A stretch of DNA of 64,000 bases, taken from assembly GCF_016433145.1 (NCBI RefSeq), contig NC_058133.1, positions 307,123,572 to 307,187,571 of the forward strand, read 5' to 3'. Shown one piece after another: positions 5,206 through 62,782 of this stretch. Origin of the DNA: Gracilinanus agilis. Its lineage: Eukaryota. Below the pieces are notes generated by a model. The model made no database searches, was not told the origin of the DNA, and was given only the letters and a program-made list of their open reading frames with translations. A program made the position numbers and the translations under genes. The stretch's first letter is position 1, and every line of letters begins with the position of its first letter.

Positions 5206-7759
5206 CCAAGAACTATAATAATGTCTAGAGTAATATAATAAGTCTAAGCTAGACTGAATAGTTTGAATCCACATATTTTTCTAAAAGTTAAATATAGCTT
5301 TACCTTCCTGACATAAGAATATCCAGAATGCTACTCTATACTGAGCCATACAGAGTGAGAATGTAACTCATGAGAAATAGCTCATGACTTCTCCCCAAAG
5401 CTTTTCTTTTACCCCTACACCAAGAGGGCACATAGTTCCAAGCAAACTTCATTTAACTATAAGGTATCCTTTGCACACTCAGAAGGATATTTGGTCTACA
5501 TCAGACTTAAAGGTAGAACACCTCAGTCCCATGCTGTATATTAGCCACCAGGCGACACTTTCATTCTGCATAGTTTGGCATATGTAAATTGTTCCTGGCA
5601 TTCTCAACCCTAAGCCTCCTTTTCTCTAACTCAGTGCACTTGCAAGCAGGGCCGCTATTTCTGAATCTCCCACTTGCTGTCTCCATCCCAGTGCTTTCCT
5701 AGATTCCTATGAAATCTAGGGGTGTGAATATTGTCAAAAATAACTTTAAATTTATCAAATGATAAAGTTCTCATCCCAAAGAATCTTAATCTCTTTTTCA
5801 ATTTGATATGACTCCTAAAAGATTCCTCCATGCCAATAACTTAAAGCCATGGGAAACCTGGCAGTTATGGGTCACTTGTCTATCTGTAGGGAGACACGAA
5901 GACTGCATAATATCCACTCTAGAAGAGAGATGGTCTGTGCATAGTAAGAACATTATTCTCTCCATAGTCAAAAAAATTCACTCGCCTTGAAAAAACTCAA
6001 TGAAGGTTTGCTTAATAATTGCAACCAGACATCACAAGAATAAAAAATGATTATGAACTTTAAAAAAATCGTTATCTAAACAAGTAAACATGCCATGATT
6101 CCGTTTATATTAAATCCACAGTGACCATTGCATGCAGTAGAGACCACAGTGTCAAGCATCTTTTGACCAACAATTTCAATGATTAAATGGCTAAATATAT
6201 TGAAATAGAAATTTCTTGAAACCTGAAATTTGTGAAAATTCTTAGATATACTGATTGCTTGACTGAGGGTAGAGTTTTCAGTCTTACCCTCCTTTGTCTA
6301 TCTGCCAGGTCACCCAACCTTCTCCTGTGAAGTCCCTTTCATCTCAAAAGATATGGGACTATAAGCATCTCTGGGTAACAATACCTGCTGCCTTGCAGGT
6401 AGACACCAAGTCTCCATGATAACTACTTTAGGATTGGGTTGATCTGTGCAGAGAAGACTATATAGTAATTCCTGTGGTCATCAACTTTGTACTCTCTTGA
6501 AAAATAAACTGAAGGTGTCATAAGTGTGAAAAAGAGATTAAATTATATAATTCCTAAATCACAATGAATCGCCTCATGGTATAATTTACCTCAATTTCAC
6601 ATTGGTTGTACATATCTTCAAAAGGACAATACAAAGTATTTTTGGCATATTATTTCATAAAATCTAAATCATATGGGAAATATGCTACTTCAAACTTAGA
6701 ATTTTGAGCATTCTGATTCATTCCTGAATGGTTATCTCTGTCTTATGTCTACTTAGTCATGTAGCCTTTCCCAGAAAATCCCACGAAGGAAAGAAAAACA
6801 AAACAAAACAGAGGAAGTCAGATATACATCCCTGAGTAATGGGACCCTGCCAGCATGTAAACAACAAATCTATAGTAACCACTCTAGGGCTAGGTTGATT
6901 ACAAGTAAGGACTGTTTTTCCTTAGAGTCGATTGTTATTCATTCCCTTGCATATATAGCAAAGTTATTTGTAATATCTGTGAAAGAGATGTCACACAAAG
7001 TAAAAAACAAAAACAGAAAAGGTAAAATAAGCAAGATAATATGCAGTTATTTATCCCATGGTACCACTTATTTTAAATATGTATTAACATTAAATTCACT
7101 AGACAACCCAATACAAAACATCACTTCATGGACTGTTTGGTGAAGATATGCAGATTAATTGAATTACTTGAACTTCATCACTTGAACTTCAGTAATGCTT
7201 GTCTGCCTATAGATAGATGTTTCCACGTCTCCCATTTTGCTGGTTGGCCTGGTCCACAGAGTTTCTCTTTGGAAGTAGATTTGAATTCAAAAGCCACAGG
7301 AGCTCTGGTGACAATAAGTAATACCTACATGTTTATATGGAGACAACAGATCACTATGGTAACTTTTATAGGAGTTATCAGATCGATCTGTATACAGGCA
7401 AGAAATTTATTTCTCCCCATGGCTAACAATTTTGTTCTCCTTTAAAAGATAAGTTAAGGAATATGAGAAATGCTCAAATAAGAGTCACACACACATATAT
7501 TTTAAATTGGCATTTAAAATAACAAGGATGATTGTACACACATCACAAATAAAATTAAAAAAAAAACAAAATTCAAAAAATTCAGATTCAGTGGTTCAGT
7601 ATCAGAATGAGAAGGAAAGGACAAAAGGACAGGCTGATTAAGTGCCTACTTTGTGCCAAGTGAACTCCCTCTTCTCAGTTCTTCCTAGTCTCTTATCACA
7701 GAATTGTGTTGTTACTTTCTCCTCTTTGATCGTTGTTCTACATGATGAGGTAGCCTTAT

Positions 7760-9130
7760 TTTTTATTAGGCTAACCCTTCTACTGGATCAAGAGATCCTA
7801 TTCCATCCCATCTCCTTCAATATATTGTCCCTCTGTCATCCCCATATACTAATTTACAATCTTTCTTTCTCGGCCAGTTCATTTCCGACTTTCTATAAAT
7901 ATGTACAACTTCCTCCTGAAAACAGAAAAACAACAAAACTCCTTACTTCATCCTTCCATCTCTGTTAACCATCACTCTGTATCTCCGCTGCCCTATGCAG
8001 TTAAACGTCTCAAAAAGTCTATATGTCTCTGTTTTTTTCTCTGCTCACCCTCAACATCTCTTCTTACAATCTGAGACCCAGCTGTTTTTAAGGACACTAA
8101 TACAATGCTAGTGAAACTGTCAATGGACCTAACCATTTTGGAGAGCAATTTGGAATTATACTCAAAGAGTTAAACAACTACTTACATTTTGACCCCGTAA
8201 TAATACTATTAGATTTATTTCCTAAGGTGATGCAAAAGGAAAATAAACTATATGTCCTAAAATATTTACAGAAATTCTTTTCATAATAGCAAATAACTAG
8301 AAACTAAAAAAATGTTCATCAATTGGGGAATGGCTAACCAAGTTATATGTAGTATATGGTTGTAATGGAATATTATTGTGCCATTATAAATGACAAACAA
8401 GATGACCACAAACTGTATGATGATCAACATTGTTAGTGATATATAGAATTATTGATAAATTGTGTGTGCTTATTTTATATGCAGTTACTTTTATACAGTT
8501 ATTGATAGTTTCAATAAATTTTAGTTGAATCTCTAGGATTTTCTGTGTATATCATTATATCATCTGAGAAAAGAGAATTTCTTGAATACACTTCCTTTGC
8601 TCTTCTGACACTGACTGTGCAGTTCTTAATCATCTTATCCTCTGATTAGTTCAATAGTCTACTTGTGGGCATGCCTGATTCATGTTTTTTTCCCTATTCC
8701 AAACCATTCTCCACTCAGCCATGAAACAGATTATACTAAATGCAGGTCCAGTCATGTCACCCCTCTACTCAAAAACCCCAGTGTCTTCCTTTTACCTCCA
8801 AGAACAAATATAAAATGATATCTTTGGTATTCAAATTTATTTAAATTCAGTAAACATTTATTAAGGCACCTACTATGATCCAGGTACTGTGCTAAGCCCT
8901 AATGATACAGAGACAAAATGAAATTCTTACCCCTCCTGGCCCCCTTTTTTCTTTCTAGTCTTTTTATATCTAGCTTATCAACATGTACTCTTTCATCCAG
9001 GGACACTGATCTCTTGGCTCTTTCACAATTGCAGTACTGCATCTCTTAACTCCTGCATTTTCTCTCTCTCTCACTGAACTCATGTCTTTCTGTCTCCATA
9101 TCCAGAGTCCTATCCATTCTGCTTAAGCTG
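7760..9130 (+). mobile_element. L2 LINE remnants (split by an L1 piece), inside the array gap
   Basis: Pyrimidine-rich L2 ORF2-like text at 7760-8100. L2 3'-region text CCAAACCATTCTCCACTCAGCC...CATGTCACCCCTCTACTCAAAAACC at ~8700-8780. An oppositely oriented L2 tail, AAACATTTATTAAGGCACCTACTATGATCCAGGTACTGTGCTAAG, at ~8852-8896. Confidence 0.65.
8100..8405 (+). mobile_element. L1 ORF2 C-terminal remnant
   Basis: AACCATTTTGGAGAGCAATTTGGAATTAT...CATCAATTGGGGAATGGCTAACCAAGTT...AATGGAATATTATTGTGCC is the L1 3' ORF2 region. Confidence 0.8.
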
Positions 9131-10857
9131 CCTCTTGCAGGATTTATTACTTGAAACTTGGAACTTGAGGAAATCTATATAGGCAACCTGCTTGCCTGTA
9201 AATAGGAATTTCTATTTTTTTCTACTTTTTCTATCTGCCTGGTCATGCAACATTTTTCAGATCAGTCTCTTTAAAGTTCAAAATCAACAACTTAGAAATC
9301 TCTAGGTAATACCTGCCTGTCTGAAGGTAGACACCAAATCTCCATGTTATCCGTCTCAGGACTAGGTTGATTTGTGCACAAATAAAAATCATTTCTCCAT
9401 GACAATTCAATAAAATACAGAATTTCTAAACTCAAAGAAGAGCAGTGACAAACCATTGAAATGTCTTCTGGCTTAAAGTTCTGCTTAAATGCTAAAATCA
9501 CTTCTTGCTATACTTGGGGAATACAATTGTACATTTAAATATGCAGTTGTCTTCCTTAGTACTTATGAAATACAAATTTCATGACCTAAATATTGTTATT
9601 AGTCTTAAACTCAGCTGGATGGCAACTATTGGACTTGAAGTCTGTCTTTATTTTACATTAACTCTTTTAGGTGAACTGTCATATTTCAAAATTCTAATAA
9701 ACAGAGAGTCTCTTACAAATAGTTGAAAAAGAAAGGGGGAAATTAATGTTTTTCAAGAATTTTCTAAATATGGAAATGAGTTCTAAAATAAGTATTGCTT
9801 TCAACTGTCTGTTATAGAGTAAATATACTGAATTGTATATTCCCTTTCAAAATAAACTGAAGTATAAACATTTGGTTTTAGGTGCCCAAAGAGTTAGAAA
9901 AAGAAGTTAATACTTACAAGTATGATTATTACATTACTACAGGTAGCATTTGATGCTGTTATTTAAAAATAATGTTTATACAAGCATCAGAAGTAATCAT
10001 TTTGAGATAAATTTTACCTTAAATTTATATTAATATTATATGTAAGAAAAAAACCAGTGCAAAACATTTCTTAACATACTGCTTCAATGGTTCAATACCA
10101 ATATCATATGCAGGGTATGTTACGTGATTAGGGAATTCTAACTAAATGCCTCTCTGTCCATGAGTACATGTTTTCAGGTCTCCCTTTTTTGTATGTCTAG
10201 CCATCCAGAATTTTTCTAGAATTGGTATTTCTAAGCTCAAAATTCACTAGATCTTAGGAATTTCTTGGTATTACTTACCTGTCTGCAGGTAAACATCAAG
10301 TCTCCATGGTAACTACTCTTGGGAAAGGTTGATCCATTCAGAAGCATGAATCTGTCCTCCTCCTAGACAAAAAAATGTTTCAATCTTTCCAAAAGCATGA
10401 AGATACAAAATAGGTATCACAAAAATATCAAAATGTAAATTCCAACAGTCAAAAAAAGGAATAATTATGCCAACATTAAAAGCAATCATCCCATGATATT
10501 CTTAATATCTAATTAACATTAATCACTGCTTGTGGCAGAGCAAAAAAGAAAACATTATTTGGCACGTTTTAAATGCTCATTGTCCATAACAATGCATAGC
10601 AAGCAGGATATATTGCTTGAAACATAATATTTGGGAAATTTTTATTAATGTCATCCTGCTGTAGGAATATCTCTTCGATACCGTTCTCAGTTTTTCTTCT
10701 CCTTGTCACCCTGACAATATAAACCTTTACTTGAAAGATGGCTTCAGTGTTTCAATACTGACATATGTTGTATCTGAGTTGAAATTTGGAAAATTCTACT
10801 TAAATGCCTTTGTGCCTGTGTGTATATGCATTTCCAAGTCTACTCTTTTGTCTACAT

Positions 10858-11049
10858 CAGTGGTTCCCAAACTTTTTTGGACTATCGCCCCCTTTCCAGA
10901 AAAAATATTACTTAGCCCCCTGGAAATTAATTTTTTTCAATTTTAATAGCAATAAATAGGAAAAATAAATGCACCTGTAGCAATCACCACCTCCCTGGAT
11001 CGCTGCAGCACCCACCAGGGGGTGGTAGCATCCACTTTGGAAATCACTG
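10858..11049 (+). mobile_element. hAT/Charlie-type MITE (family A), 192 bp
   Basis: TIRs CAGTGGTTCCCAAA / TTTGGAAATCACTG; 8-bp TSD GTCTACAT / GTCTATAT (one mismatch), resembling the NTCTAGAN target typical of Charlie elements. Confidence 0.92.
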
Positions 11050-11538
11050 GTCTATATGGACATTCAATCTTCTCTTTGAAAGATCTTTCAATGACCAAAA
11101 TCCAGAAGATTTTAGGAATGTTTAGTTATTACTTGCCTATCTGCAGGTAGATAGGAAGTTTCCATACTAACTAATCTTGGGGGAAATTTATTTATCTAGA
11201 AACATGGAATATCTTTCTTATGCGGAACAAACTATTATTGCTTCTTCCAAATGTATCTGAGATATGCTTGACTTTTGCAAGTTGATATCACACAACCAAA
11301 ATTCAAAATAATTATCAGCAGACAAAGTAATAGAAACAAATAGCTCAAAATCACAAATCATAATTCCAAGGAACTATTTTTACTAAATCCACATTAAGCA
11401 TTCCATGCCATGGACAACATGTTGCAAACTAGTCCTTGAAAGATTCTTTTAGTTGCCTAATGTATGTAACCTATGAAAGCTATATTACTTGAAACTTTGG
11501 CCCATTGGATCTGTAGGTAATGTACTCATGCTCTAGAG

Positions 11539-11709
11539 CAGTGATTCCAAAAGTGGGCACCACCGCCCCCTGGTGGGTGCTGCAGCAATCCAGGGGCACA
11601 GTGATGGCCACAAGTGCATTTGAGGGTGGTGATAGTATGTGACAGGGGGCGCTAAGTAATATTTTTTCTGGAAAGAAGGAGGCAGGCCAAAACAGTTTGG
11701 GAACCACTG
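11539..11709 (-). mobile_element. hAT/Charlie-type MITE (family A), 171 bp
   Basis: TIRs CAGTGATTCCAAAA / TTTGGGAACCACTG; perfect TSD CTCTAGAG; reverse-complement homologue of 10858-11049 with a different central segment. Confidence 0.94.
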
Positions 11710-14700
11710 CTCTAGAGGTATACTCATTTATACACCTTTGATTTTCCTTTCTCTGTGCTCATTTAGTTCTCTCCTTAGATATTTCCTCAGAGGTCAAAAG
11801 CTGCTCAATATCAGGAATCCTTGAGTGATTAATTTTTCCCCTTGCCTATAAGTTGACACTAGGTCTCCATGGAAACTAATCCAGGGCTGATTTGATCAGT
11901 AGACATGCAAAAACTATCATCCTCCTCATAACCAACAAATTTTTATTTCCTTGCAAAATATCTTGAGGTTTATGTGATATTTTTCAATAGGTGATACGAA
12001 CATTTTAAAGAAATAAACATTTAAAACAAGATTTGATGTACCAACACTGCAATTTTGAATTACTGGCTAATTTCTGCTTGCCTCTGGGTAGACTTTTCCA
12101 TGTCTCCCTTCTTTTTCTGTATGACTGGCCACCCTTCCTTCTTCTTGGAAGTCTCTTCAAAGGAAAAAAAGCTACTCTGCCTCTCTGAGTAAACCTTGCC
12201 TGCTTGCAGGTAGACACCAAGTCTCCATGATAACTACAATAGAGCTTTGATCTGTACAGAATCAAGGATCATATTTCTCCCTCAGGTCAATATTTTTTCA
12301 TTTCCTTGCCAAGTCAACTGAATTAAATTTGACATCTGCAAAAACATATCACAGACATTTAAAATTAAGCATCCACTTTTAACATAGCATAGATGATTAT
12401 CTCAACATCATAGGTAGTCATGACAGGGTACTGTATATATCAATTCTACATCAGCCATTGATTGAATTCACTAAACAACACAATGTAGAACATTTTTTGA
12501 CAAATTCTTTAAGTAAATAAATCAACATCACATGCAAAATGTACTGCTTCAAGAAGGGTGAATACTTCTGGATAATGCCTCCTTGCATCTGTATATATTT
12601 CCATTTCTCTTTGTCTTTCTCCTTAGCCAGTCTCCCATCACTGAAGAAATTTTCAAAGTTCTGCTTGCCCTCAGGTAGACACCAAGTCTTCTATGATAAC
12701 TACCATTTGACTGGGTTGATTCATGTAGACTATAGCCCTCTCTATGGCCAATAATTTTATAGTCCTGTGAAAAATGTGCTGAGCCTTATGTGACATTTTC
12801 AAATACGTGTCAACAGCATTAAAAGTGGGAAATAATATAATAAAGTTTATGATATGTAACTCTTTCCTTTTCCTTTTTGGCTCAAATTTGCATTAATATT
12901 GTATGCAGTAAAACAACAACTAAAAACTGTTCTTTGAAAGATTGTTTCTGTAGATGAATATAGCAATCATGTGGTTTTTACAGTTTGAAATAGGAACTAC
13001 ATGAACTCTGATTAATATTTGAGTGCTTGTGGGTAGGCCAGTAATTTTTCACTCCCTTACAAAACAAGTTGAGTAATGCATATTTTGAAGTCTCCTTAGC
13101 ATTTAAAAAAGAAAAAATCAATATTTAAAATAAAGATGCTTATGCTAACATTAGAAATAATCACTCCATACTACCTTTTACCTAAAATTTACATTAATAG
13201 CTCATGCAATAGAAAGCACAACTAAAATATTCTATTAAATTTGGTTTTAATGGCATAATATCTAAATCACATGCAAGCTATATTATTTGAAACTTGGAAT
13301 TTTGGAGCCTCAGTAACTTCAAGCCAATTCTGGGCAGACATTTTCATTTCTACCCCTTTTGTCTGGCTCCTTGGTCACTTCCTTGGAAATAAATTCAAGA
13401 TCAAAGGCAACTTAAATAATTCTAGTTAATTCTTACTTGCCTAATGGTAGAAATCAGGTCTCCATAGTTGCCACTAAAGGAGGGTTGATTTGTTCTAATG
13501 AAGAATTACTTTCCTCTACAGTTCTAATAACCTTGCAAAATCAGCTGAGGCATACTTGATGTGTGTAAAAGAGCAGTGTTGATATCAAAATAAATATCAA
13601 CATTTCAAATAAAGATTATCTTAGCTTCACAGGAGATTATGCTACAGTACCAGTTCTATGAAATCCACATGAACTGTGCCATGCAGTAGACAACACCACT
13701 GAAATTTCACTTGACTAAGTTTTCCAGTATTTAAATATATTTGGCCAAGGCAGGATGTGTTTCTTGGGTAATTTGGGAAACTCTGGGTAATGAATTCCTG
13801 CTCTGAAAAATGTTTGACATTTCTGTTTTTTCTGTCTCCTTGGCTACCCAACCTTCTTTTTTGGCAATCCTTTCAAAGGTAAAATATCATAAGACTTTAT
13901 AAAACTCTGGACAATACCCACCTGCCTTTGTATTGGTAAATACTCTCCATGGTATCTACTCCAAGTCTATATTGATCTGTACAGAATAGAGGACTACATT
14001 CTTCTCCCAAGCCAATGATTTTGCTCTACTATGGAAAATAGGCTTAGGCATATATCATATCTTCAGATTGGCTTCACAAGTATAAAAAAGTACAACATTT
14101 AATGAGTATGATTATGCCAAAATCAAAAGTAGTCATTTCATACTGCTGCTGTTTACCACAAATTAATGACATTGTAGCATATAGTAGATAACATAATAGA
14201 AAACACCAATTAAATTTTTTTCAGTGGCTAAATGCAGAAGTCATATGAGGGATTATTACTTGATATATCGAAATTGAGGGGCTTGAGAGAATACATTTCT
14301 GTTCTTTGGGAAGATTTCCATCCCACTCTTCTTTTTCTATCTTCCAGGTAACATTCTTTTATCTTTGGAAATCCCTTGAAACATTCCAATCTCCCAGAAG
14401 TTATGAATCTGGTTAATTCTTACCTGCCTTCATGTAGACATTAAACCTCCATGATAACTACTCTAGGTCTGAATTAATCTATTCAAAGTAAAGGACCAAA
14501 TTTTCCCCCCATATCCAACAATTTCACACTCTTTTGCTAAAAAAAAACTTGAGGCAAAATTATTGGATAGGTATCATACATATAGAAAAAAATGTTTACA
14601 TGATAAATGTTGAGGATGATTGTAGCAACTTCATAAGTAATAACCCCATCTTTCTCTTTGCCTCAGATTCATATTCTAATATGTTGTAGTAAACATATGT

Positions 14701-16419
14701 AGTGGAAGGCATAATGCAGAACCTTTCACAACAGCCTGCTTTACTTGGTCAGTATCTTTACCAAGTTCAAGATATATTACTAGAAACTTGAAACTTAGGT
14801 AGCTATGGGCATTCCCTGTCGGCTGTTGGATGGATACGTCCTTGTCTCCTTCCTTTATCTGTCTGTTGGGTCACCCAGTCTTCTTCATTTATGTACCCTC
14901 AAGATAAAAATCCCATTCTAAATTAGACATTTCTGTTAATGGGTAGAAAACAAATGTTCCTAATAACTACTTTTTGTCTGGGTTGATCTGGGCAGAGGTA
15001 AGGACTGCATCATTTTTCACTTCCTTGCAAAATCAGCTATCAATATCTGTTACTAGAGTAGCAAATATTCATATTTAAGATAACAAGGAAGAGTATTTCA
15101 ATATCACAAGTAATCATCCCATGGAAACATTTATATCTGCAGATATATAATTTGAAATGTGGGATTTAAGGAACTTTGGTTAGTTTCCATTTGACCTCAT
15201 ATAAACTCTTCTATGACTCTTATCTTTGTATATCTTGTGCATCACCCAGCTTTCTCCTTGGAAGGCCTTTCCTGTTTAAAGCCAAGGGAACTTAAGTGGT
15301 TCTGTGTAATCCTGGCTTGTTTAAAGGTAAACACCAAGGTTCCATGAAAACTACACAAGACTAGGTTTATCTACATAAAAGCAAAGACTCCATTTTTCCT
15401 CAGTAGCCAGTAAATTTTTACTCTTTTGTAAAATCTTTGGAGGCATACATGAATCTCCAAGTTTATGTCAAACATCACTAAAATAATTAACATGGAAAAT
15501 TAGTTGGATAATAATCCCAACTTCACAGATGACAATCCATGATACTACACATCTTAAATATATTAGTAATGAATGCAGTAGCCATCACACAATGGAAAAG
15601 AAAAAAATTACTTGATAGACTGACATACTGTTTTAATGTCTAAATATATGTTATATACATATAAACAATATACATTCATGTATACATACATAGCATATAC
15701 AAAAATGTATATGCAATTTTCATATTTGGTATATATATATGTACATATATATGCACACACATACTTTTCTGTGTGTATTTATTACTTTAAAATTGAATCA
15801 TGATGAACTTTGGGAAATATGTGCCAATTTATTTGCTTGTGGGTATACACTTCTGTGGCTCCATTCCCTTTCCTAGTCACTCAGGATTATCCATGGGCAT
15901 CTCTTTAAGATGAAAAGCCATAGGAATTTAGGAAGTTCTGTAATTTCTAGCTGCCTGTGGAATGTCATGAAATGTCAGTGTTAATTATCCAAAGTAAGGA
16001 GTGATCACTGATGAGATAAGGACTACATTTTTGCCCTTGGCTAACAATTTTGTTCTCTCTAGGAAATAAGATAAGTCTATCTTCAAATAGACTTCACATG
16101 TATTAGCAAAACTTAAAGTTAATACAAAAAAATTAATATAATCCACAGGATGATTATCTTAATATCAAATAATCACTATTCCTGGTTACTCTTTACCTCA
16201 ATTTCCATAAACATTTTTTAAAGTAAACATCCTAATACAAACCATTGCTTAATAGTCTATTTCAGTGGCCAAATGTCCGAGTTATTTGGTAAATATGCTT
16301 TAAGCACATATCATAATAAATACATGTATGCCCATTGTACTCAAATAAGTATAAACATAAAAATGAATTCAAAACTAATATAGGTAAAATATAACAAATA
16401 TACATAAGTATTGCTGTCA

Positions 16420-16610: not shown

Positions 16611-17249
16611 CTGTGTATGTGTGTGTGTGTGTAAAATTTAAATAGCAAAATAATACATATGTAGCTAGAAGAAAATTGTGCATATATGGCTTGAACACAT
16701 AAGTAGGCATGAATATGTAGAGAGAGGTACTAAGACAAGGACACAACTCAGAAACAACAATATAAACCGTATATTTAGTTTTTTTTATTAAAAATATATA
16801 TATATATATATTATTTATCAGTATTGTCATCTGGATATATGTGCAACCAATTTCCACTTTTTTCTATAACACTGAAAGCTAGTTTGGTCATAGGTTGCAT
16901 TGATCCAGCTCTCTTATAAATTGTAGTGTTCCATCCCTATGCCCCTGTTGTTTTGTTTTATGGTCTGATCCTGATAATCTCCTTACCTATAGCTCTTCAG
17001 TATGAAATCTTACTGAGAGGACCCAAGCTATCATCATTTCTCTATGTATTATTGCTGATGTTTTTCTATAGTTGAATTTCTAGATGAAATATTTATTGCC
17101 TCTGAATTCATTCCATTTCCCTTTAGGATCTTTCTCCATTCAAGCAATGTCACAATAAACAGTCTTTGTCATTTGAAACCTAACTTTCTGAATCACTATC
17201 TACTTCAGATGGTCTTTTTATCACTGGTATTGGGTGTGCCACTCTCATC

Positions 17250-18600
17250 CTTCAGGTGGCTTATTCATTTTACTCAGAGAATGCCAAGTTAATTGTCCAT
17301 CATTTCTTACCAACTCATTAGTGTCTACCTAACTCTCCTATGAGTAATTGCAACAAATTCTGCTTACTGTACCTCCACTTTTTTCTGGGACTATTTTCTA
17401 AAAAAGGAAAGATGCATGGTCTCTAAGTAACTTGGAACACAGTAGCTTGCTATAGGTCTACTAACTTGTGTATCCTTTGCTCTTGAACACCAAGGTTTCT
17501 CTACAAAACTTTCTCCTTGCTGAAAGTTGACAGTGAGCATAGATATCGTAATGTTTCCATCTGAGTTCTTCTGAAGTGAGGGCATTGTTAACTTGCAGGC
17601 TTCTTTCTGATTCTAAATCATGAGATCAATGGGTTATGGGTATTTGCATCTTCTAAGTTGGCAGTCCAAAAATCAATGAATTTGTGTGGCTCTCATTCAA
17701 ATATAGCAAATATGATATAAAATCTATTACAACACTCCTGATAGTTATGAATGTGAACTAAAAATTCCAGATATTGAATCCATGGTTATTTTTATTCAAG
17801 GTCACAGTGTTCCTAATGTGTACATTAATGGACATTTGAAATGCTTGGTCCAAATCTCCCTCAGGATGTTAAAATTTAGCTCTAACCTTTTTGACACTTG
17901 CGAATACTACTATTTCTTTGAGGAGCTTGCTCTCAAAATCTGCCTTGATCAGAATAGATTCTTATAGGGAAACCAAACACTGAGAATTATTTTTCATACC
18001 ACATCTTACTAGTAATGGAAACTTTTTAGTTCTTTGTTGGGTATGGTTGGGCATACATGGCGAAGTAAAAACTCATCATTAAGATATAGATTATGGTCTT
18101 ACTTTCTTCTTCTAGGGACATTCAATCAATGTAGAACAGTTTCAAAAGTTTGCTCATGTATGCTTACATTTTGCACATAAGCAGTATGAGTTGGCAGTTT
18201 TTCTTTGAACACATCAAATATGTCACACACTTCTTGATGATATATGCTACAATACTGGACCAGTAAAATCTGTTTCTTACTACTTCTAGGTTTCTTTTAC
18301 CTAAAATTCTATAGTCACCATGTAGTGTATTCATGGTGCTGTTATAATATTCTGGAGTGAACCAGCTGCTTCTTAGTGCCCTATATAAGTAATAGTCTGA
18401 TGTTGCATTATGTTTCACAACTCTAATTTCTGTCTTTCTTAATAAACGACTGAATCCTAATACAAAATAAAGCAAAAGAGACAAAAATTGTAGATCTTGA
18501 AATTTCTTTGTAGATGGTCTATTCAGGACCATAGCAATCTTTCTTGAGTACTGGTTATCCCTTTGACATGACTTGAGAGAGTCTCTAAAACAAAAATTCA
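17250..18600 (-). mobile_element. Decayed Ty3/Gypsy LTR-retrotransposon pol fragment (integrase Zn finger, core and C-terminal domain)
   Basis: Minus-strand translation across stops and frameshifts gives LYR..QLV.PEYYNSTMNTLHGD..LGKRNLEVVRNRFYW; LKLFYID*MSLE..ILMM..FAMYAQPYPTKN*K..KMWYEK*FSVFGFPIRIYSDQGR/DFESKLLKEI; HPEGD; LVHIHN; and KVL*RNLGV..HKLVD. The motif order is that of a Gypsy integrase. Confidence 0.88.
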
Positions 18601-19179
18601 TCAGTTGATAGCTTCAGAACATCTGCCTTTAACCAGGCCTATTCTCCTGTTCTTCCTGTGTCCTTCCAAATGCAAAATCTAGAAATATAAATAATTTCAG
18701 GTAATTCATGTCTATGATCATTTTCTCTCTGTTCTGTAGATTGATGTTTAAGCTATATATTTTTTAGTTTTATTGACATTTTTACGTTACAAAAATTTGT
18801 AGATTACTCCTACTATCTGAGAGGTGTCTCAAAACAAAGTTCAGCAGTAAAGAAAATTAGTATTCAAGTGAACTTACCTAAAGTACAAGATTGCATCTGT
18901 ATCACCCACCTGACACCTATTTTTAAAATTTTTATTATTTTAAAAAAAGGACAGAAATCTATTTTCTCTCCCTACAATCCCAATAAAGAAAAGGAAAAAA
19001 ATAATTTCTAGTAAAAAATGAGCATATCTAAAATTTGTTTTCTAGTAACAAACATGCATATCTATCAGTACTAGGCTTCAAACTGCATTATAAATCAGTA
19101 ATTATTAAACCAGTTTGTACTGCTTCTAAATGTGTCCATCAGTGACATAGATTAGGGTACAACATACAGAAAAAAAGAA

Positions 19180-19810
19180 ATATAATAGCTTGGTATTTGG
19201 AAGACCTAGAGACCCCAGTTATTGGGTAGACTCCTTATATGACAAAAACTACTAGAAAAACTTGAAATCAGTTCAGTAGAAATTGGATGTAAATCAACAC
19301 TGTATACCAAGATAAGCTTCAAATAGATATATGACTTATACATAAAAGGTGATGTTATAAGCAAATTAGAGGAGCAAGGAAGAAATTACCTTTCATGTCT
19401 TTGGATAGGGAAGAATTTATGGCTAAAGTTCTACAGAGGATTTTTAAAATGAAGGATTTTGATTATAAAAATAGAAACATTTTAGCACAAATCAAATCTA
19501 ATCAAATTAAAATGAGAAGAGAAATACACAACTGGGGGGTAAATCTTTTATAGCAAAATATCATACCAAAGATATATAAAAATCATTCAAATTTATAAGA
19601 CTAAGATAGATTTCTCAATAGTAAATCAAAGAGTATGAATTGGTGGCCTTCAAAGGAAGAAATTTAAGCTATCAATAAACATGAAAAATGCTTCAAATAA
19701 CTAATAATTAGAGAAATATAAATTAAAACAACTATGAGATTCCTTCTCAAACTATCACATTGGTAGAATTATGAATTAGTCTAGCCATACTGGAAGCAAT
19801 TTAAAATGGT
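19180..19810 (+). mobile_element. L1 ORF2 3' remnant
   Basis: GACTCCTTATATGACAAAAACTACTAGAAAAACTTG..., AATTAGAGAAATATAAATTAAAACAACTATGAGATT. Confidence 0.8.
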
Positions 19811-22293
19811 GTGGGGAAAATATGCGTACCAAGCAAAACAAATCACCACAATGCCTGTATAGGGGTATGTATATGTGTGTAACATATATACATATATGGA
19901 ATCATGGGTGGGATCATGAGTATTTATTGTATTTATCATAGTCTTTATTTCCAAAGTGGTTTCTTCATACAGTGTTGTTGTCAGTATATAAGTAACTCAT
20001 TCTATTCCTCATTTTATAAAGGCAAAACTAAAACAATTTATATGACATCAATATTATAAAAATGAGAGGTTTCATAATCTTGAGTTTAGATTCTTTAATG
20101 CCTTTCTTTTAGCTCTTTGCCTGATTGACTAGCCTTCTTCTTGATAACTCCAAATTGTTTGAAGTAAATGGTCAAACTAGTAAAACCCAGTTTCACAGAT
20201 CTTTCTTCAACTATGTCAAAAGAATCCGGGAGCATATACAGTGTAATTCTTAAGATTGTAAGCAAATGACTGCCAGCCAGATATTCCAGCATATGTGAAA
20301 CTTTTGTGTTGATAAACTGATTGTCTTAGTTCTTTTATTCTAGATCTAGTGGACATATATTCCTAATATTCTATATTATTATTTTAGGTGATAAAAATGG
20401 TCTTCTATGCTCAATAATGTTGTTTTTGATGAGTAACTCTCACAAATGACTTCAAAGTTTTTTTTTCATAGATAAAGAAATATTCCAGAATATTCTTGTA
20501 ATGGTCAGGACTCTGTGAGGGGCTTTCTGTTGGTACCACCTTGAGAACACATCTACCCTACTACTAAGTATATCCTTCAACCAATCCTTCCATTCTTCAG
20601 GTGTTAGGGTATTCCTACTTGTTAATAGTAACTTTCTGGTACTTTAACTAGGCTAGAATTGGTAAGAGATAACATCTAGAGGGAAATCTTGAGACTATTT
20701 CCTGTGCACATATATAAAAGATAAAAAGGGATTACTTTGAAAAAAAATTAGATGCTTTATTGAGCACAGAAGGCTTGCTACGAGGAGAAAATAAAAACAA
20801 AAACTAATCCATATTTGAGTCAGAAAAAAAAAGCATCTGTTATCAGAAGGATATTAGAGGTCCAGAAATGGTTTTCTTAGAAATGGAACCATGCTCTCCC
20901 CAGGAAATAAATATGGAAAATTTGGGTCTTTGAAAAGAGATGTTATCTCTTACCAAAAATATATCAAGAATAATTGAGTTATCAAAAATGTCAACTAATT
21001 TATAAAACCCTATTTGAATAACATCATTGGATCTGATGTTGCTATGAATTATTTAAAAACATTTAAGTTATTTTACAACCCTTTTCAATGATTTTTAGGT
21101 TCCTTATTTTTTATAGTTGTGGCTACTAATATCAAGAGATCTCTGTTAACTCCTACATTCAAAACATCACCACTTATGCATTAAAGTCTATGTCCTTAAA
21201 ATAAACTGAACCATGCTTATAATTTTCTTCAAGGAAATGCTAAATTGTGGTACAGAGATGCAATGTTATACAGTAATCACACAATGAAGCAATAACTCCA
21301 TATAAGAAATGCATAGCAAGTAAAATAGTAAAGTATGTATGCAAATTAGTGGCAATGGAATGCATAAGATAATGGGAAAGCAATTACAGCAACTGCAGCC
21401 ATGTACCAACAATTAGCATATAAGTAAACAAATAGTACCCATTGTCAATACCACCTACTCATGCATGTAATCTCATCAAAACATATATTTAACACATTAA
21501 CCAGCAGCACCAACAGACACTTAAATTTAAAATCATTCTATTAATCAAATCATTCTATCATGGAACAGAGCTTTACCCATTGAAGACTTTAAAATTATTA
21601 GGATGCAACCATGTAACATCACACATTACCATTGCTTGCTATTGTTTACCTAAAATTCACATTACCTATTTTATATCATAGACAGTAAAAATAAAATATA
21701 ATTTGAAAGACTGTTTTGTTGTCACACTAAGGAGGTATAATTTGAAACTTGGTACATGGGAAACTCTGTAATGTCTGCCTGCTGTGTGAATATTCACTTC
21801 AGTGTCTCAATCCTTTGCCTTACAACCCAGGAAGTCTCTTCAAAGTAAAAATCCAACTGAATTCAAGAAAACTGTTTAAGTCACAAAGTCTCAATGGGAG
21901 ACTACCACACTGTGGGAGTACATTCAAGAACAAAGTTGCTCTCTATGGAGAATAACAGGAACAATAAGCGTAAAAGACCAATAGAGATCCCCCAAAATAT
22001 TAAATACTTAAAATAAACAGAATAACTGTGACAGCATTACAGATGCCTATCCTTTATCCTAAATCCAAATTAGTATTGAATTTATTACACAACATAATAT
22101 GAAACATTGCTCAATAATCTTGCAAGTAGATATTATTTAAATAACATGGTATATTCTTCTTGAAACTTGGAGAACTCTAGGTAATGCCTACCTCTTCTGT
22201 GGGTAGAAATTCTACTTAACACTTCTCTGGTTCTCTTTCTGGCCATTCTAACTTCTTAGTGGAAGTCCCTTGAAAGTCAAAACTTTTTAGAGA

Positions 22294-22475
22294 GGGGCAG
22301 CTGGGTAGCTCAGTGGAGTGAGAGTCAGGCCTAGAGACAGGAGGTCCTAGGTTCAAACCCGGCCTCAGCCACTTCCCAGCTGTGTGACCCTGGGCAAGTC
22401 ACTTGACCCCCATTGCCCACCCTTACCAACCTTCCACCTATGAGACAATACACCGAAGTACAAGGGTTTAAAAAA
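22294..22475 (+). mobile_element. Young full-length SINE1_Mdo-type tRNA-derived SINE
   Basis: GGGGCAGCTGGGTAGCTCAGTGG A box, GGTTCAAACCC B box, MIR core, AAGGGTTTAAAAAA tail; perfect 14-bp TSD AAAACTTTTTAGAG (22279-22292 and 22476-22489); inserted inside an array unit. Confidence 0.95.
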
Positions 22476-23778
22476 AAAACTTTTTAGAGGTAGAGAGCTC
22501 TGGATAATACTTTGTTAGCAAGTAGACACAAAGTCTCCATGGTAACCACCCTTTGGTCAGAAGTAAAGACTACACTATTCCTCATCACCAACAATTTGGT
22601 TCTCCCTTGAAAAATAAGGAGCAGTATACTACAAACAGTCCCCAAACAGATTCACACATAATCAATGCTATACAAAAAGATAGTTACACCAATACCAGAA
22701 GTAATAATCAGATGACATTTTCCCCTTAAATATTCATTTGCATTGCATGTAATTGGTGGTGCATGCTTGCAAACTCTAAGGCTGAAATTGGCATATATTT
22801 GGAGTTCTAGATAGTTCAGAAATTTGGCATTAGCCCAAGTTAGATGATAAATACTTTGAGTCTGCTAGTATTTACCACAGCCACCAAAATAATGATGGAA
22901 AATTAAAACAATAAGGCTAATTATTCTACCATCACTAAAAGTCACTGGATGATACTAATTACATCAAATCCATATTCACATGGAATCCTGGAGATAGCCC
23001 AATATAAAGCATGACTGGACAGACTGCTTCATTGAACAAATAAATGAAGGATATCACGAACTTGGAATCTGAGAAATCCTGATGCCTCTCTATCCTTGGC
23101 AGATACTTCCTTCTGCCTTTCTGTGGGATCAGATTTGTCAATGAAGGTCTCTTCAAGACAAAAATTTTGGTGAACTTATGCAACTCCATGTAATGCATGC
23201 TAATGTGAGAAGTTACTAAGTTCCCACCTTTACTACACAATGGAAAATATGATTTCTGGAAAGGCAAAGTCTACATTCCTCCTCACACTTAACAATTTTG
23301 ACTTTCTCCATAAACTCAACTGAGGTCTGTTAGATATCTGTAAATAGACCTCACAACTAATAGGAAAAACTACAGTTAAAGTAAAAAGGGTAATAAGCTA
23401 AAAATGACAGGTTATTATCCTTTGGTGTTGTTATCTTCAAATCCATTAACTTTTCGTGTAGGAGAAAACATATTACAAAACATCATTTAATAGACTGTTT
23501 CAGTGGCAAAATGTCTAAATAACATACAAAATGTATAACTTAAAAAGTTGGAACCTGGGAGACTTGGAGTAATGCTTACCTGCTCAGAAAAGAGATATTG
23601 TTTCCATGTTAACTAATGTAGAGTAGATAGGTGCCAAGACAAGAACTACATTCTTCCCTGTCACAATTTTCCACTCAGCAGAGAAGTCATGAGATTCTTG
23701 AAATCTACAAATAGACACCACATGAATCAGGATAAAAATCAAAATTTAAAACAAACAAGACAATTAATTATTCTACTG

Positions 23779-24131
23779 TATTAGTGTTTGATTCAGAACC
23801 ACATTAAAGTGGCATGTGATAGGAAAATAGAAATGGCAATACTTGACAAAATCAATGAATAAGTTAAATTAAATATATATTACTTAAACCTCAAATTAAG
23901 GAACTTTGGGCATTGTTTGGATTCCTGTCTTTAGAAAATTCATGTGCCTGTTCCTGATTATCTGGTCACTAAGCCTACTCACTAGAAATCCCTTTAAAAG
24001 AACAGTCTCAAGAATTTAGGCAATTCTTGATACCTGTGTGCTTTCAGGTAGACACCAAGTCTCCATGGTAACTACTTCAATGGGAGGCTGATCTATGAAG
24101 AATTAAAAAAAATACATTTGTCCATTTGGTA

Positions 24132-24194
<63 letters not shown>

Positions 24195-24548
24195 NTATTA
24201 GTGTTTGATTCAGAACCACATTAAAGTGGCATGTGATAGGAAAATAGAAATGGCAATACTTGACAAAATCAATGAATAAGTTAAATTAAATATATATTAC
24301 TTAAACCTCAAATTAAGGAACTTTGGGCATTGTTTGGATTCCTGTCTTTAGAAAATTCATGTGCCTGTTCCTGATTATCTGGTCACTAAGCCTACTCACT
24401 AGAAATCCCTTTAAAAGAACAGTCTCAAGAATTTAGGCAATTCTTGATACCTGTGTGCTTTCAGGTAGACACCAAGTCTCCATGGTAACTACTTCAATGG
24501 GAGGCTGATCTATGAAGAATTAAAAAAAATACATTTGTCCATTTGGTA

Positions 24549-24602
<54 letters not shown>
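23779..24602. repeat. Perfect 417-bp direct duplication flanking a single N (probable assembly artefact), each copy ending in (TG)n(TA)n
   Basis: 23779-24194 and 24196-~24602 read identically by eye; N at 24195; both copies terminate in a TA microsatellite. Confidence 0.9.
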
Positions 24603-24605
<3 letters not shown>

Positions 24606-25834
24606 GTATACATATACACACATATTGTGAATGTCTATGTTTGTATGTGTTTACTTCTATCTTCCTGGTTATATAAATTTCTCCACGGATGTTACATCAA
24701 GGTCTAAAGCCAAAATGGCTCAATTATGCCTGTTTTCTTGTAGCTTAACACTTGGTCTCTATGAAAACATGATAACTTTCTTCCCATACTTTACCAAAAA
24801 TTTTACCAAAATTTTGTACCCCTTTACCAAATCATCTAAGACATTTTCATCATCTGCAAATAGACACTAAATGCATCTCAACATTAATATATTTATTATC
24901 CCACTATAAAAAGTTCATTATCCTATATTTTTATTTCAAGTGCACATTAATTTTGCATTCAGTAAGCAACATTATGAAAAACAACTTTCTCAAAAGCTAT
25001 TTAGACAAGGAATTTCAGGGGCTAAATGTCTAAGTCACATGCAAGACTAGTTACCTGAATCTTTGAATTTCTGGAATTTTAGATAATTCATAAGAGCTCT
25101 GGGAGTAGACTTTTCTATAGCTAACTTTTTTGTCTTTCTTACTGGCCACTCAGGATTCTTCATGGAAATTATCTCAAGGTCAAAATCCACAGGGGTTCAG
25201 GTAACTCTGGGTAATGTCTTTTCAAATAAGGTAAACCCCCAAACTTCACAATAACTACTGTAGGAAGGAATTGACTTGTTTAAAGGAAAGGATTGCATTC
25301 TTCCCCACTGTCCAAAAAATGTGTTCTTCCTTGCTTGACAGCTTTGATATATTTGATATTTACAGAAATGCCATGTATGAGAATAAAGGACACCATTTAA
25401 AATTTAAACATGATTTTCCGGATATTAGAGGAAATCATTCAATTAGACTATTTTTATCAAATTCAAATTAACTTCCAAAGGAGCTGGCAGTTTCAGTCAT
25501 CTTTTCCCAGTCATTTCCTTCAGCAAATCTGAAACAGGTCTGATATTCATCTTCCCTCTCAAATTTGCAAGCCAGAAGTGCCAGCAGTAGCTTGAAGTTT
25601 GAAGAGTTCCAAAGAAAAGTTGAAATTGAAGTCTTCAGCTTCCTGCCTTTCACTATCTTTGTCCAACCCCTCCCTCAGGGCAGGTCATTCATTAATATCA
25701 ATAGAAAGAATTCCATAACAATGGGCTTTGGGACAGAGGTTATATATATTCAGACATATTACTTAAAACTTGGAATTTACAAAACTTTTAGATATGTATT
25801 TTTCCTTATGTTCTGTAGATTTCCATTTAACCTC

Positions 25835-25925
25835 TCCTTTCTTCCTTCCTTCCTTCCTTCCTACTTTCATTCCTCCCTCTCTGTTTCCCTCCATTCCTCC
25901 ATTCTTCCCTCTCTTCCTCCAGATT
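25835..25925. repeat. (TTCC)n-like pyrimidine low-complexity tract
   Basis: CTTCCTTCCTTCCTTCCTTCC and degenerate continuation. Confidence 0.85.
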
Positions 25926-26559
25926 CCCCCAGATTTTATATTGCTTTTTCGAAATTACTTGACATCTTCAAATAAACCTCAAAAGCATAAAAATAAACAA
26001 CAATGTTAAAAATAATAACAAGGATTATTATACCAACACTGAATATTATCACCCCATAGTATTTTTATATCAAGTTCACATTTACATTACATGAAGTAGA
26101 CAGCACAATGTAGACTGTCCTTTGGTGAACTATTTCATTTGCTAAATAGCTAGCAAAAATACTAGATATATTAATTGCAAATTGCAATTCATGAAATTTA
26201 GGATTATGCATACCTTTCCTTGAGGAGACATTTCAGGCCCATCAAGTATCATCAGTAAATCAACTATGAAAATGGAAATTTGTGCCAAGAAAAAAAAAAA
26301 CAAACTACATTTGATTAAGACCACTTTATGCTAAAGATCCTAAAATAAAGAGGGAAATTTGACCTCAAAAATATTAATGAGATATCTTAGCATTGGGCAC
26401 TTGACTGAGCATACTAATTGTATACTTTGTTCAAATGCATCAAAATAGGTAAAAGAAAGCAGAGATAAAACTAAAATAGCATTGAATATTATTAATAATA
26501 CATATTCAAGTGAGGAAATCTAGCAACCAAAGAAAGAAAGGATGTTTTGCTAATATTTG

Positions 26560-62760: not shown

Positions 62761-62782
62761 GTTCTATTTTAAAGTCTTAGAG

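What the first reader, a model, noticed from the sequence alone, without database searches (positions are those of the whole stretch)
5450..26300. ~21-kb ancient tandem array of ~470-bp units: candidate undescribed small-RNA or repeated-exon locus
Seen: about 25 or more head-to-tail copies of one ~460-500 bp unit. Uninterrupted core spacings include 12207 to 12672 (465), ~13444 to ~13930 (~485) and ~24740 to 25228 (~485). Copies are heavily diverged with many indels, so this is not a homogenised satellite, yet motif order is kept throughout and conservation is uneven along the unit. Established: tandem exon/intron units carrying one small RNA each are the architecture of the eutherian SNORD115/116 (SNHG14), SNORD113/114 (MEG8), C19MC and Sfmbt2 clusters; I know of no described marsupial orthologues of these arrays. 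Inference: this may be an independent marsupial array of that kind (miRNA or snoRNA host, or repeat-rich lncRNA). I do not recognise the unit as a known TE or RNA family.
Basis: partly seen in the sequence, partly recalled or inferred. Interest (0 to 1): 0.88.

Follow-up and report, generated by a model that had tools for sequence, protein, structure and literature searches.

The report
Ancient tandem array with conserved core
A roughly 21-kb stretch of this marsupial chromosome is a very old, mostly decayed head-to-tail repeat of a ~470-bp unit. It carries no recognisable small-RNA genes, but a sharply bounded 31-base motif has stayed almost untouched in a few units, which suggests a still-unknown function.

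Summary
A profile built from one unit finds 33 distinct full or partial copies. All are on the + strand and all lie within 5859-26238, with none elsewhere in the 64 kb. Units are ~430-510 bp and 21 distinct cores are recognisable.

Copies are about equally distant from each other (56% identity, K80 0.69, 31% from consensus). I found no higher-order repeat. This fits one ancient amplification burst followed by independent decay. Later transposon insertions and a 5.3-kb foreign block interrupt the array. One extra 417-bp copy abuts a single N and is probably an assembly artefact.

The small-RNA reading fails. There is no Rfam match, no hairpin in each unit, no C/D boxes, no consensus structure, no ORF and no CpG island.

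One signal is not neutral. The 31-mer CAGGTAGACACCAAGTCTCCATGRTAACTAC is exact in three units and nearly exact in a fourth. Those units are 30% diverged everywhere else. None of 87 coverage-matched neutral simulations came close. Upstream of these cores lies a variable pyrimidine/G tract with almost no A, ending in CAG.

My best reading is a fossil tandem array with a few cores kept by selection at the nucleotide level. They are most likely splice-acceptor/exon-start modules of a + strand non-coding transcript, or protein-binding sites. Other first-stage notes in this scan cover this same stretch.

The parts
5859..16300 (+). Array block 1: about 22 full or partial units of ~430-510 bp, head to tail
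   Evidence: nhmmer profile hits; core starts at 5890, 6399, 6857, 7339, 9327, 10289, 11147, 11852, 12210, 12675, 13447, 13936, 14434, 14943, 15327, 15961
16301..21587 (.). 5.3-kb block with no unit homology that splits the array. The unit phase is not continuous across it. Its identity is unknown.
   Evidence: No profile hit even at E<=10; no Pfam hit for its ORFs
21588..26238 (+). Array block 2: about 10 full or partial units
   Evidence: nhmmer hits; cores at 22522, 23209, 24048, (24465 duplicate), 24740, 25231
6396..6426 (+). Exact 31-nt conserved core, preceded by a pyrimidine/G tract (one A, at its 5' end) and CAG
   Evidence: the DNA search, 0 mismatches; 4-way alignment A2; tract composition
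12207..12237 (+). Exact 31-nt conserved core
12672..12703 (+). Near-exact core, with a 1-nt insertion plus one substitution in the middle
24045..24075 (+). Exact 31-nt conserved core (G at the R position). The copy at 24462-24492 belongs to the probable assembly duplicate.
10286..10316 (+). Core with 2 mismatches and an intact CAG (intermediate state)
22519..22549 (+). Core with 3 mismatches (intermediate state)
10858..11049 (+). Later insertion: a MITE-like element starting CAGTGGTTCCCAAAC and flanked by GTCTACAT/GTCTATAT. By recollection this resembles hAT-type terminal repeats and an 8-bp target-site duplication.
   Evidence: 87.5% identical to 62783-62974; sequence read
11526..11714 (-). 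Later insertion: second copy of the same element family, in inverted orientation
22293..22453 (.). Later insertion: interspersed repeat also present at 41102-41263 and 45002-45118
7553..9131 (.). Non-unit stretch inside block 1. It includes an interspersed repeat at 8092-8381 that is also present at 30517-30795.
24196..24612 (+). 417-bp copy identical to 23779-24195, joined at the single N (24195) within a (TA)n run: a probable assembly-join duplicate

Best explanation
This is a fossil tandem array. A ~470-bp AT-rich unit, which already held two copies of a ~40-nt motif 113 bp apart, was amplified about 30-fold in one ancient burst. The copies have since decayed independently without homogenisation, and transposons have inserted into the array. 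Most of it is neutral DNA, and it does not encode one snoRNA or miRNA per unit.

Within it, one 31-nt core (CAGGTAGACACCAAGTCTCCATGRTAACTAC) has been held almost unchanged in 3-4 units by selection acting on the nucleotides themselves, not on a protein. The other units lost the core at different times.

The conserved block starts exactly at a CAG. That CAG follows a tract that varies in sequence but stays nearly free of A and free of AG. I therefore read these cores as splice-acceptor plus exon-start modules of a long + strand non-coding transcript, where the 28 nt after the AG would be an RNA-level binding or enhancer motif.

Shown: the array, its age structure, the absence of small-RNA features, and the non-neutral preservation of the core. 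Inferred: selection rather than gene conversion, the strand, and the splice-site role.
For: Array and burst. All profile hits are on the + strand within 5859-26238. Pairwise identity is 0.559 with sd 0.032, which is about the sampling noise I estimated by hand, and it does not depend on distance or on a 4-7-unit phase. K80 is 0.69 and divergence from consensus is 31%. Interspersed repeats sit inside units.

Core not neutral:
- The composition-corrected 30-nt conservation peak is 0.135. In 83 coverage-matched neutral simulations run through the same pipeline the mean was 0.077, sd 0.017, and 1 of 83 reached the observed value.
- Four units have 0-1 mismatch in the 30-nt core, where I expected about 9. 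In 87 neutral simulations the largest such count was 0 in 63, 1 in 23 and 2 in 1. The core is the most over-dispersed window of the unit (ratio 3.98, simulation maximum 3.64).
- These four units are as diverged as the others outside the core (30.5% against 31.8%; Spearman rho 0.04).
- The 4-way alignment shows about 31 of 33 core columns invariant, with ordinary diverged flanks. Exact 31-mers lie at 6396, 12207 and 24045.

Constraint on nucleotides, not codons. By my reading there are no changes at third-codon positions in any frame, and unit 12675 carries a frame-shifting 1-nt insertion.

Splice-acceptor context. All four conserved cores have YCAG|G. Their 13-nt upstream tracts differ at about 27% of sites (my hand count), yet none of those changes created an A. 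Using the substitution rates, I estimated this by hand at about p=0.002. The test was chosen after seeing the data. Acceptor-like sites are denser on the + strand of the array (2.99 per kb against about 1.6 per kb in the flanks) and cluster at the core.
Against: - No transcript evidence of any kind is available.
- No + strand donor recurs downstream of the core, and donor density is below that of the flanks. The exon's other end is therefore undefined.
- There is no CpG island or other promoter-like feature in the 64 kb.
- Substitution asymmetry is weak. If anything it leans toward minus-strand transcription.
- Only 3-4 of 21 cores are intact, so any function does not need the array as such.
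- The selection inference rests on paralogues within one genome. The neutral model assumes uniform rates and a star-shaped tree.
- The splice-like signals read equally well in mirror image on the minus strand.
Confidence: 0.4

Rival explanations
1. DNA-level reading. The array is the same fossil repeat, but the 31-nt core is a composite protein-binding site, for example for a zinc-finger protein or a cluster of transcription factors. It would be kept in a few units as an enhancer, silencer or architectural element. This resembles DXZ4 or ICCE, where only the CTCF motifs survive monomer divergence.
For: The block is sharply bounded and conserved at every nucleotide, with no coding or RNA-structure signal. 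No transcript features such as a promoter, CpG island or donor sites were found. Diverged tandem arrays that retain only protein-binding motifs are documented (PMC3491370, PMC6125249).
Against: 31 nt is long for one ordinary site. I see no CTCF-like consensus in the core, but that rests on my recollection of the motif and no motif library was available. A DNA site does not explain the strand-specific purine/A avoidance just upstream, unless that tract is part of the site.
Confidence: 0.2
2. Purely neutral relic. The array has no function. The few intact cores come from short-patch gene conversion, local rate heterogeneity, or alignment and ascertainment effects.
For: Averaged over all units, the excess conservation is modest: raw 30-nt peak 0.674 against 0.55 overall, permutation p=0.07. 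The permutation test is anti-conservative on neutral simulations. Most units carry 3-14 core mismatches, close to the neutral expectation. The region is CpG-poor, AT-rich and without ORFs. First-stage notes report other old arrays in this genome.
Against: Four units with at most 1 mismatch never occurred in 87 neutral simulations run through the same pipeline. Their flanks are about 58% identical, too low for homology-driven conversion in my judgement. The conserved block has the same edges in all four. These units are not younger than the rest.
Confidence: 0.22
3. Small-RNA host array. Each unit would carry a snoRNA or miRNA, as in SNORD116, C19MC or Sfmbt2.
For: Only the tandem unit architecture with one conserved short block per unit.
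Against: No Rfam hit. No hairpin in each unit, and mean folding energy equals the control. No C/D box pairs. RNAalifold gives 0 pairs. The 8-bp stem-loop shows no covariation: 72.5% paired against 68.3% in shuffles, and 7.5% of shuffles reach the observed value. A conserved block of 31 nt is too short for a pre-miRNA or a snoRNA.
Confidence: 0.04
4. Coding mini-exons. One version is + strand terminal exons encoding a short tail (frame 0 reads VDTKSP then stop; frame 2 reads RHQVSMITT...). The other is minus-strand first exons with a Kozak-type ATG (METWCLP...).
For: Stops fall at the same place in several units in frames 0 and 2. PAS-like hexamers lie 50-170 nt downstream in all four conserved units. 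On the minus strand, A at -3 and G at +4 flank the ATG, and by my reading AG|GT follows 14 nt later in 3 of the 4.
Against: Conservation is complete at synonymous positions. Unit 12675 has a frame-shifting insertion inside the block. Consensus ORFs reach at most 72 aa, and ORF density equals the flanks. There are no Pfam or protein-database relatives. PAS hexamers occur at 2.9 per kb by chance here. The four residues after METWCLP are not conserved.
Confidence: 0.05

Closest known systems
ICCE and DXZ4 macrosatellites (PMC6125249, PMC3491370)
   Same: These are tandem arrays of non-coding monomers whose sequence diverges while a short motif is retained. ICCE is described as about ten diverged monomers or fragments with related motifs.
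   Different: Those motifs bind CTCF and the loci are X-linked with 3-5-kb monomers. Here the unit is ~470 bp. The locus appears to be autosomal by its neighbours: MHC-region genes lie 51 Mb away according to a scan note. The core shows no CTCF-like consensus by my recollection, only 3-4 of 21 cores are kept, and no binding data exist.
Repeat-exon small-RNA host genes (SNHG14 with SNORD115/116, MEG8, C19MC, Sfmbt2 cluster)
   Same: Head-to-tail units, each with a splice-site-like element and one better-conserved short block.
   Different: No snoRNA or miRNA features appear in any unit. Units are 4-5 times shorter. Copies are far more diverged, with no concerted evolution.
lncRNA repeat modules such as the Xist A-repeat or Firre RRD
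   Same: A short conserved core is separated by variable spacers, here pyrimidine-rich. The function would lie in the RNA motif rather than in a structure spanning the whole unit.
   Different: No transcript has been demonstrated. Spacers are about 440 nt rather than tens of nt. Most cores are decayed.
Opossum 528-bp centromeric satellite (reported in PMC4053949, citing Alkan et al. 2011)
   Same: A long-monomer tandem repeat of similar unit length in the presumed species.
   Different: Centromeric satellites are homogenised and megabase-scale. This array is 21 kb with 56% identity between copies. I could not compare the sequences because that paper and its consensus are not held.

Membership tests
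C/D-box snoRNA host array (SNORD115/116 type) | C box (RUGAUGA) and D box (CUGA) 60-150 nt apart with a terminal stem, once per unit | tested here: not met
   One C..D pair per strand in 20 kb, none with a stem of 4 bp or more. C-box words are rarer than in the flanks.
C/D-box snoRNA host array (SNORD115/116 type) | Match to a curated snoRNA covariance model | tested here: not met
   0 hits at gathering score. One snoR101 hit at E=0.031 lies in the non-unit block.
miRNA cluster (C19MC / Sfmbt2 type) | A stable hairpin of about 60-80 nt at a fixed position in each unit | tested here: not met
   Mean 90-nt MFE is -12.3 in the array against -12.5 in the control. Strong hairpins occur only at microsatellites and inserted elements. 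The mir-297/466 matches are (TG)n(TA)n.
Conserved structured RNA | Consensus secondary structure supported by covariation | tested here: not met
   RNAalifold gives 0 pairs on 20 core-centred segments. The 8-bp stem shows no excess pairing over row shuffles.
Tandem repeat / satellite DNA | Head-to-tail copies of one unit in a single orientation | tested here: met
   33 distinct profile hits, all on the + strand and contiguous.
Tandem repeat / satellite DNA | Homogenisation of copies (concerted evolution) or a higher-order repeat | tested here: not met
   Identity is 0.56 for all pairs, with no dependence on distance or phase.
Tandem repeat / satellite DNA | Match to a catalogued satellite or TE consensus (Dfam/Repbase) | not testable with these tools
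   No repeat library was available. Metagenome scan for the core: 0 hits. Literature string search: 0 papers.
Macrosatellite with a retained binding motif (DXZ4/ICCE type) | A short motif conserved amid diverged monomers | tested here: met
   The 31-nt block is exact or near-exact in 4 units whose non-core divergence is 30%.
Macrosatellite with a retained binding motif (DXZ4/ICCE type) | Demonstrated protein (CTCF) occupancy of the motif | not testable with these tools
   No ChIP data or motif library. No CTCF-like consensus by my recollection.
Repeated cassette exons | A 3' splice site (branch point, pyrimidine tract, AG) at a fixed position in the unit | tested here: inconclusive
   9 of about 21 cores score at least 8 bits at the core. 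AG is present in 66-71% of units. All four conserved cores have YCAG|G and a tract nearly free of A.
Repeated cassette exons | A 5' splice site at a fixed distance downstream | tested here: not met
   Only 3 donor-like sites between +30 and +50 across all units. + strand donor density is 0.74 per kb, below the flanks.
Repeated coding exons | An open reading frame kept in phase, with relaxed third-codon positions | tested here: not met
   Consensus ORF is at most 72 aa and ORF density equals the flanks. The core is invariant at all codon positions, and one conserved unit has a frameshift.

The most novel reading that the evidence does not exclude
The locus is a marsupial long non-coding gene, or a long-range regulatory platform, more than about 100 million years old by my rough estimate. 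Its working parts would be a handful of 31-nt modules, each with a splice-acceptor-like context, that survive inside an otherwise dead tandem array. That would make it an independently evolved repeat-module RNA or DNA scaffold, comparable in logic to the Xist/Firre repeats or to DXZ4/ICCE, but unrelated in sequence and lying on what appears to be an autosome.
Probability: 0.3. Interest if true: 0.65.

Novelty: new member of a known kind. Interest (0 to 1): 0.45.

Why it matters
If the 31-nt cores are truly constrained, this gives a clean natural experiment. About thirty equally old paralogous copies sit in one place, most decaying neutrally, and a few hold one short motif fixed. The motif's boundaries are defined to the base without any cross-species data. 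That makes an otherwise anonymous marsupial non-coding element directly testable, by checking splice junctions, protein binding or deletion. It also shows how function can persist in a small subset of an old tandem array.

If the cores turn out to be conversion artefacts, the locus is an ordinary fossil repeat, of a kind other first-stage notes also report in this genome.

Tried and rejected
- TRF on the array: too diverged, nothing found except the 417-bp duplicate.
- Higher-order repeat of about 2.9 kb, suggested by recurring spacings in the repeat finder and BLAST offsets. Rejected: identity in phase is 0.566 against 0.557 out of phase.
- Four-fold sub-repeat of about 118 bp within the unit. 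Only segments 2 and 3 share a significant ~39-nt motif (z=11.8); the other pairs are not significant. The upstream copy of the motif (core A) is not conserved above background.
- Plain column-permutation test for clustered conservation. It proved anti-conservative on neutral simulations (9 of 14 gave p<0.05), so I replaced it with simulation-calibrated statistics.
- Stem-loop GATGATTA/TAATCATT with 'compensatory changes', from an earlier first-stage note. No covariation found.
- Transcription-coupled substitution asymmetry. Weak and inconclusive: A>G/T>C ratio 0.88, not significant; C>T over G>A p=0.02.
- Pfam on 18 ORFs, including those in the 5.3-kb block: nothing. My impressions of an integrase or an L1 ORF2 tail were not supported.
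- Protein database search with a 105-aa ORF that spans a unit: no candidate.
- Metagenome scan for the core: 0 hits.
- tRNA scan: 0 hits.
- The paper with the opossum 528-bp satellite is not held.
- Recursive splice site, U12 intron, CTCF site, GRE and SMAD-element readings of the core. I considered these from memory only. None fitted well and none was formally tested.
Full report
**1. Is the array there?**

Tandem Repeats Finder does not see it. It reports only microsatellites and one 417-bp, 99% two-copy repeat. Gap-free repeat finding already showed about 10-14 copies of several motifs in a fixed order, spaced about 460-510 bp apart.

A single unit (12196-12660) used as an nhmmer query found 26 + strand matches. 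Iterating to a profile gave 34-36 matches with E-values down to 1e-95. All are on the + strand and all lie between 5859 and 26238. With filters off and E<=10, nothing significant appears elsewhere in the 64 kb, nor inside 16301-21587.

- The array starts at 5859, not 5450.
- It lies in two blocks separated by 5.3 kb of unrelated sequence.
- One 'unit' (24196-24612) is a 100% copy of 23779-24195, joined at the window's only N inside a (TA)n run. It is probably an assembly-join artefact. I excluded it from all statistics.

**2. History of the array.**

- All unit pairs are about equally distant. Mean identity is 0.559 with sd 0.032, which is about the sampling noise I estimated for ~300 columns.
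- Identity does not fall with distance and shows no 4-7-unit phase. The ~2.9-kb spacings seen are therefore not a higher-order repeat.
- K80 distance is 0.69 and divergence from the majority consensus is 26-35%. From general knowledge, that is in the range of the oldest recognisable mammalian repeats. An age of the order of 100 million years is my inference, not a measurement.
- The pattern fits one amplification burst followed by independent decay, with no concerted evolution.
- Later events are visible. A MITE-like element at 10858-11049 starts CAGTGGTTCCCAAAC and is flanked by GTCTACAT/GTCTATAT. By recollection this resembles hAT-type ends and an 8-bp target duplication. It is 87.5% identical to a copy at 62783-62974. 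An inverted second copy lies at 11526-11714, and two other interspersed repeats lie at 8092-8381 and 22293-22453.
- The unit itself holds two copies of a ~39-nt motif 113 bp apart (z=11.8).

**3. Tests of the small-RNA and exon readings.**

- Rfam: no family reaches its gathering score in the window. The permissive scan returns only mir-297/466-type matches on (TG)n(TA)n runs and a few scattered hits at E near 1.
- Hairpins: 90-nt windows fold no better than a flank control (-12.3 against -12.5 kcal/mol). The few strong hairpins are microsatellites or inserted elements, not a fixed position in the unit.
- C/D boxes: one C..D combination per strand in 20 kb, none with a terminal stem.
- Consensus structure: RNAalifold on 20 core-centred segments predicts no pair.
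- The 8-bp stem-loop noted by another first-stage reader pairs in 72.5% of cells against 68.3% in row shuffles, and 7.5% of shuffles reach the observed value. It looks like a decaying ancestral inverted repeat without covariation.
- Coding: the consensus has no ORF above 72 aa, and ORF density equals the flanks. Pfam and the protein database give nothing.
- Splice signals: acceptor-like sites are enriched on the + strand (2.99 per kb against about 1.6 per kb) and cluster at the core in about 9 units. Donor-like sites do not recur downstream.
- No CpG island exists anywhere in the window; CpG observed/expected is about 0.08.
- Substitution asymmetry relative to the consensus is weak.

**4. Is conservation uneven?**

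Averaged over units, the core window AGGTAGACACCAAGTCTCCATGATAACTAC has pairwise identity 0.674 against 0.55 overall. A plain permutation test over columns gives p=0.07.

G/C columns decay faster than A/T columns (0.43-0.45 against 0.61-0.62). After correcting for this, the core stands out at +0.135, permutation p=0.005.

I then ran neutral simulated arrays through the same nhmmer pipeline. These showed that the permutation p-values are anti-conservative: 9 of 14 neutral arrays gave p<0.05. I therefore calibrated directly against simulation. None of 79 full-coverage simulations and 1 of 83 coverage-matched simulations reached 0.135 (mean 0.077-0.079, sd 0.017-0.019). A real but modest excess remains.

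**5. Where the excess comes from.**

The excess is not spread over the units. Mismatches to the 30-nt core per unit are 0, 0, 1, 1, then 3, 4, 4, 5, 6, 7, 7, 7, 7, 8, 9, 10, 12, 14.
- The core is the most over-dispersed 30-nt window of the whole unit (variance ratio 3.98 against a median of 1.37). It is the only window where three or more units have at most 2 mismatches.
- In 87 coverage-matched neutral simulations, the largest number of units with at most 1 mismatch in any window was 0 (63 simulations), 1 (23) or 2 (1). The largest dispersion ratio was 3.64.
- The four units are not younger. Outside the core they are 30.5% diverged from consensus against 31.8% for the rest (rho=0.04), and they are 58% identical to one another.
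- Their 4-way alignment shows about 31 of 33 core columns invariant, from CAG to CTAC, with ordinary divergence beginning at once on both sides.
- The exact 31-mer occurs at 6396, 12207 and 24045. Copies with 2 and 3 mismatches lie at 10286 and 22519. The copy at 12672 has a small internal indel.

Homology-driven gene conversion is hard to reconcile with flanks that are only about 58% identical and with identical block edges. I therefore favour purifying selection on a subset of cores, with the other units released from constraint at various times. This is an inference from paralogues within one genome.

**6. What kind of function?**

Constraint covers every position, including those that would be synonymous in any frame. 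One conserved unit carries a 1-nt insertion. A peptide-coding role is therefore unlikely. The 31 nt are too short for a snoRNA or pre-miRNA, and they lack structural support.

The block begins exactly at a CAG. In all four conserved units the 13 nt upstream differ at about 27% of sites, which is roughly neutral (my hand count). Yet none of those changes created an A, and no AG occurs for 20-36 nt upstream. Decayed units have 2-4 A's in the same tract. Using the substitution spectrum measured, I estimated by hand that this has a probability of about 0.002. I chose the test after seeing the data.

A tract held in composition but free in sequence, ending in YAG, is what a working 3' splice site looks like. 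My preferred mechanism is therefore a + strand non-coding transcript that uses a few of these acceptors, with the following 28 nt acting as an RNA-level motif.

Several points count against this reading:
- There is no recurrent donor site and no promoter in the window.
- No expression data are available.
- The signals have a mirror-image reading on the minus strand: a Kozak-type ATG giving METWCLP, with AG|GT 14 nt later in 3 of the 4. Another first-stage note raised this reading.

A DNA-level protein-binding site is the main functional rival. Its precedent is ICCE/DXZ4, where diverged monomers keep only their CTCF motifs (PMC6125249, PMC3491370).

**7. Context and limits.**

Scan notes place MHC-region genes (PRR3/ABCF1) 51 Mb upstream and ORC1 280 Mb upstream on the same piece. 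A follow-up report on another locus calls the genome marsupial. That is consistent with a very large marsupial autosome, but I did not verify the species.

The opossum centromeric satellite is reported to have a 528-bp monomer (PMC4053949, citing Alkan et al. 2011). I could not obtain its sequence, so a relationship is untested. No repeat library, other marsupial genome or expression data were within reach. A metagenome scan and a literature string search for the core were both blank.

**8. Verdict.**

The array is real and very old. The reading of one small RNA per unit is not supported. Most of the array looks like neutral relic DNA. It does, however, hold a sharply bounded 31-nt element preserved in 3-4 units well beyond the neutral expectation, with a splice-acceptor-like context.

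My estimates are about 0.65-0.7 that this constraint is real, and about 0.4 for the full preferred explanation including the + strand splice-acceptor role. I rate interest as moderate, at 0.45. The locus is a candidate new member of the class of tandem-repeat loci that retain a short functional core, pending cross-species and transcript evidence.

Noticed in passing
window 23779-24612 (N at 24195): A 417-bp segment is repeated with 100% identity. The junction falls exactly on the window's only N, inside a (TA)n run. It looks like an unmerged assembly overlap rather than a recent duplication.
   Followed up: partly
window 10858-11049, 11526-11714 (-), 62778-62974, 63680-63886 (-): Four copies of a ~190-bp MITE-like element that starts CAGTGGTTCCCAAAC. 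The copy at 10858 has GTCTACAT/GTCTATAT flanks, which look like an 8-bp target-site duplication. Each copy folds into a strong hairpin (about -33 to -40 kcal/mol).
   Followed up: partly
window 22293-22453, 41102-41280, 44939-45118 (-): A second interspersed repeat family of about 160-180 bp (75-85% identity between copies). One copy sits inside the array and forms a strong local hairpin.
   Followed up: no
window 24120-24193 and 24547-24624: Sub-threshold Rfam matches to mir-297/mir-466 (49 bits against a gathering score of 90) are simply (TG)n(TA)n microsatellites. They are false leads for a 'Sfmbt2-like' cluster.
   Followed up: yes
window 34419-34842 vs 38387-38824: An inverted pair of ~440-bp segments at 75% identity, 3.5 kb apart. 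Probably two old copies of one transposon in opposite orientation.
   Followed up: no
window 32365-32889 (+) and 63412-63789 (+): An unusually long 174-aa ORF for this AT-rich DNA. It shares a ~120-bp repeat-derived segment (78% identity) with an ORF near the window's end. There is no Pfam match, so it is probably a GC-richer interspersed repeat lacking stops rather than a gene.
   Followed up: partly
window 16301-21587: A 5.3-kb block inside the array with no unit homology and no Pfam-detectable ORFs. The unit phase does not continue across it, so it is more than a simple insertion. Its identity is unknown.
   Followed up: partly
whole window 1-64000: No CpG island anywhere (at most 6 CpG per 500 bp; observed/expected about 0.08) and ORF lengths near random expectation. 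The window looks like gene-poor intergenic or deep intronic DNA.
   Followed up: yes
unit positions about -135..-95 relative to each core (e.g. window 12069-12110): Each unit contains an older second copy of the core motif (AATGCCTGCCTGCCTGTGGGTAGACATTTCCATGTCTCC) 113 bp upstream of the main core. This copy is not conserved above background.
   Followed up: yes
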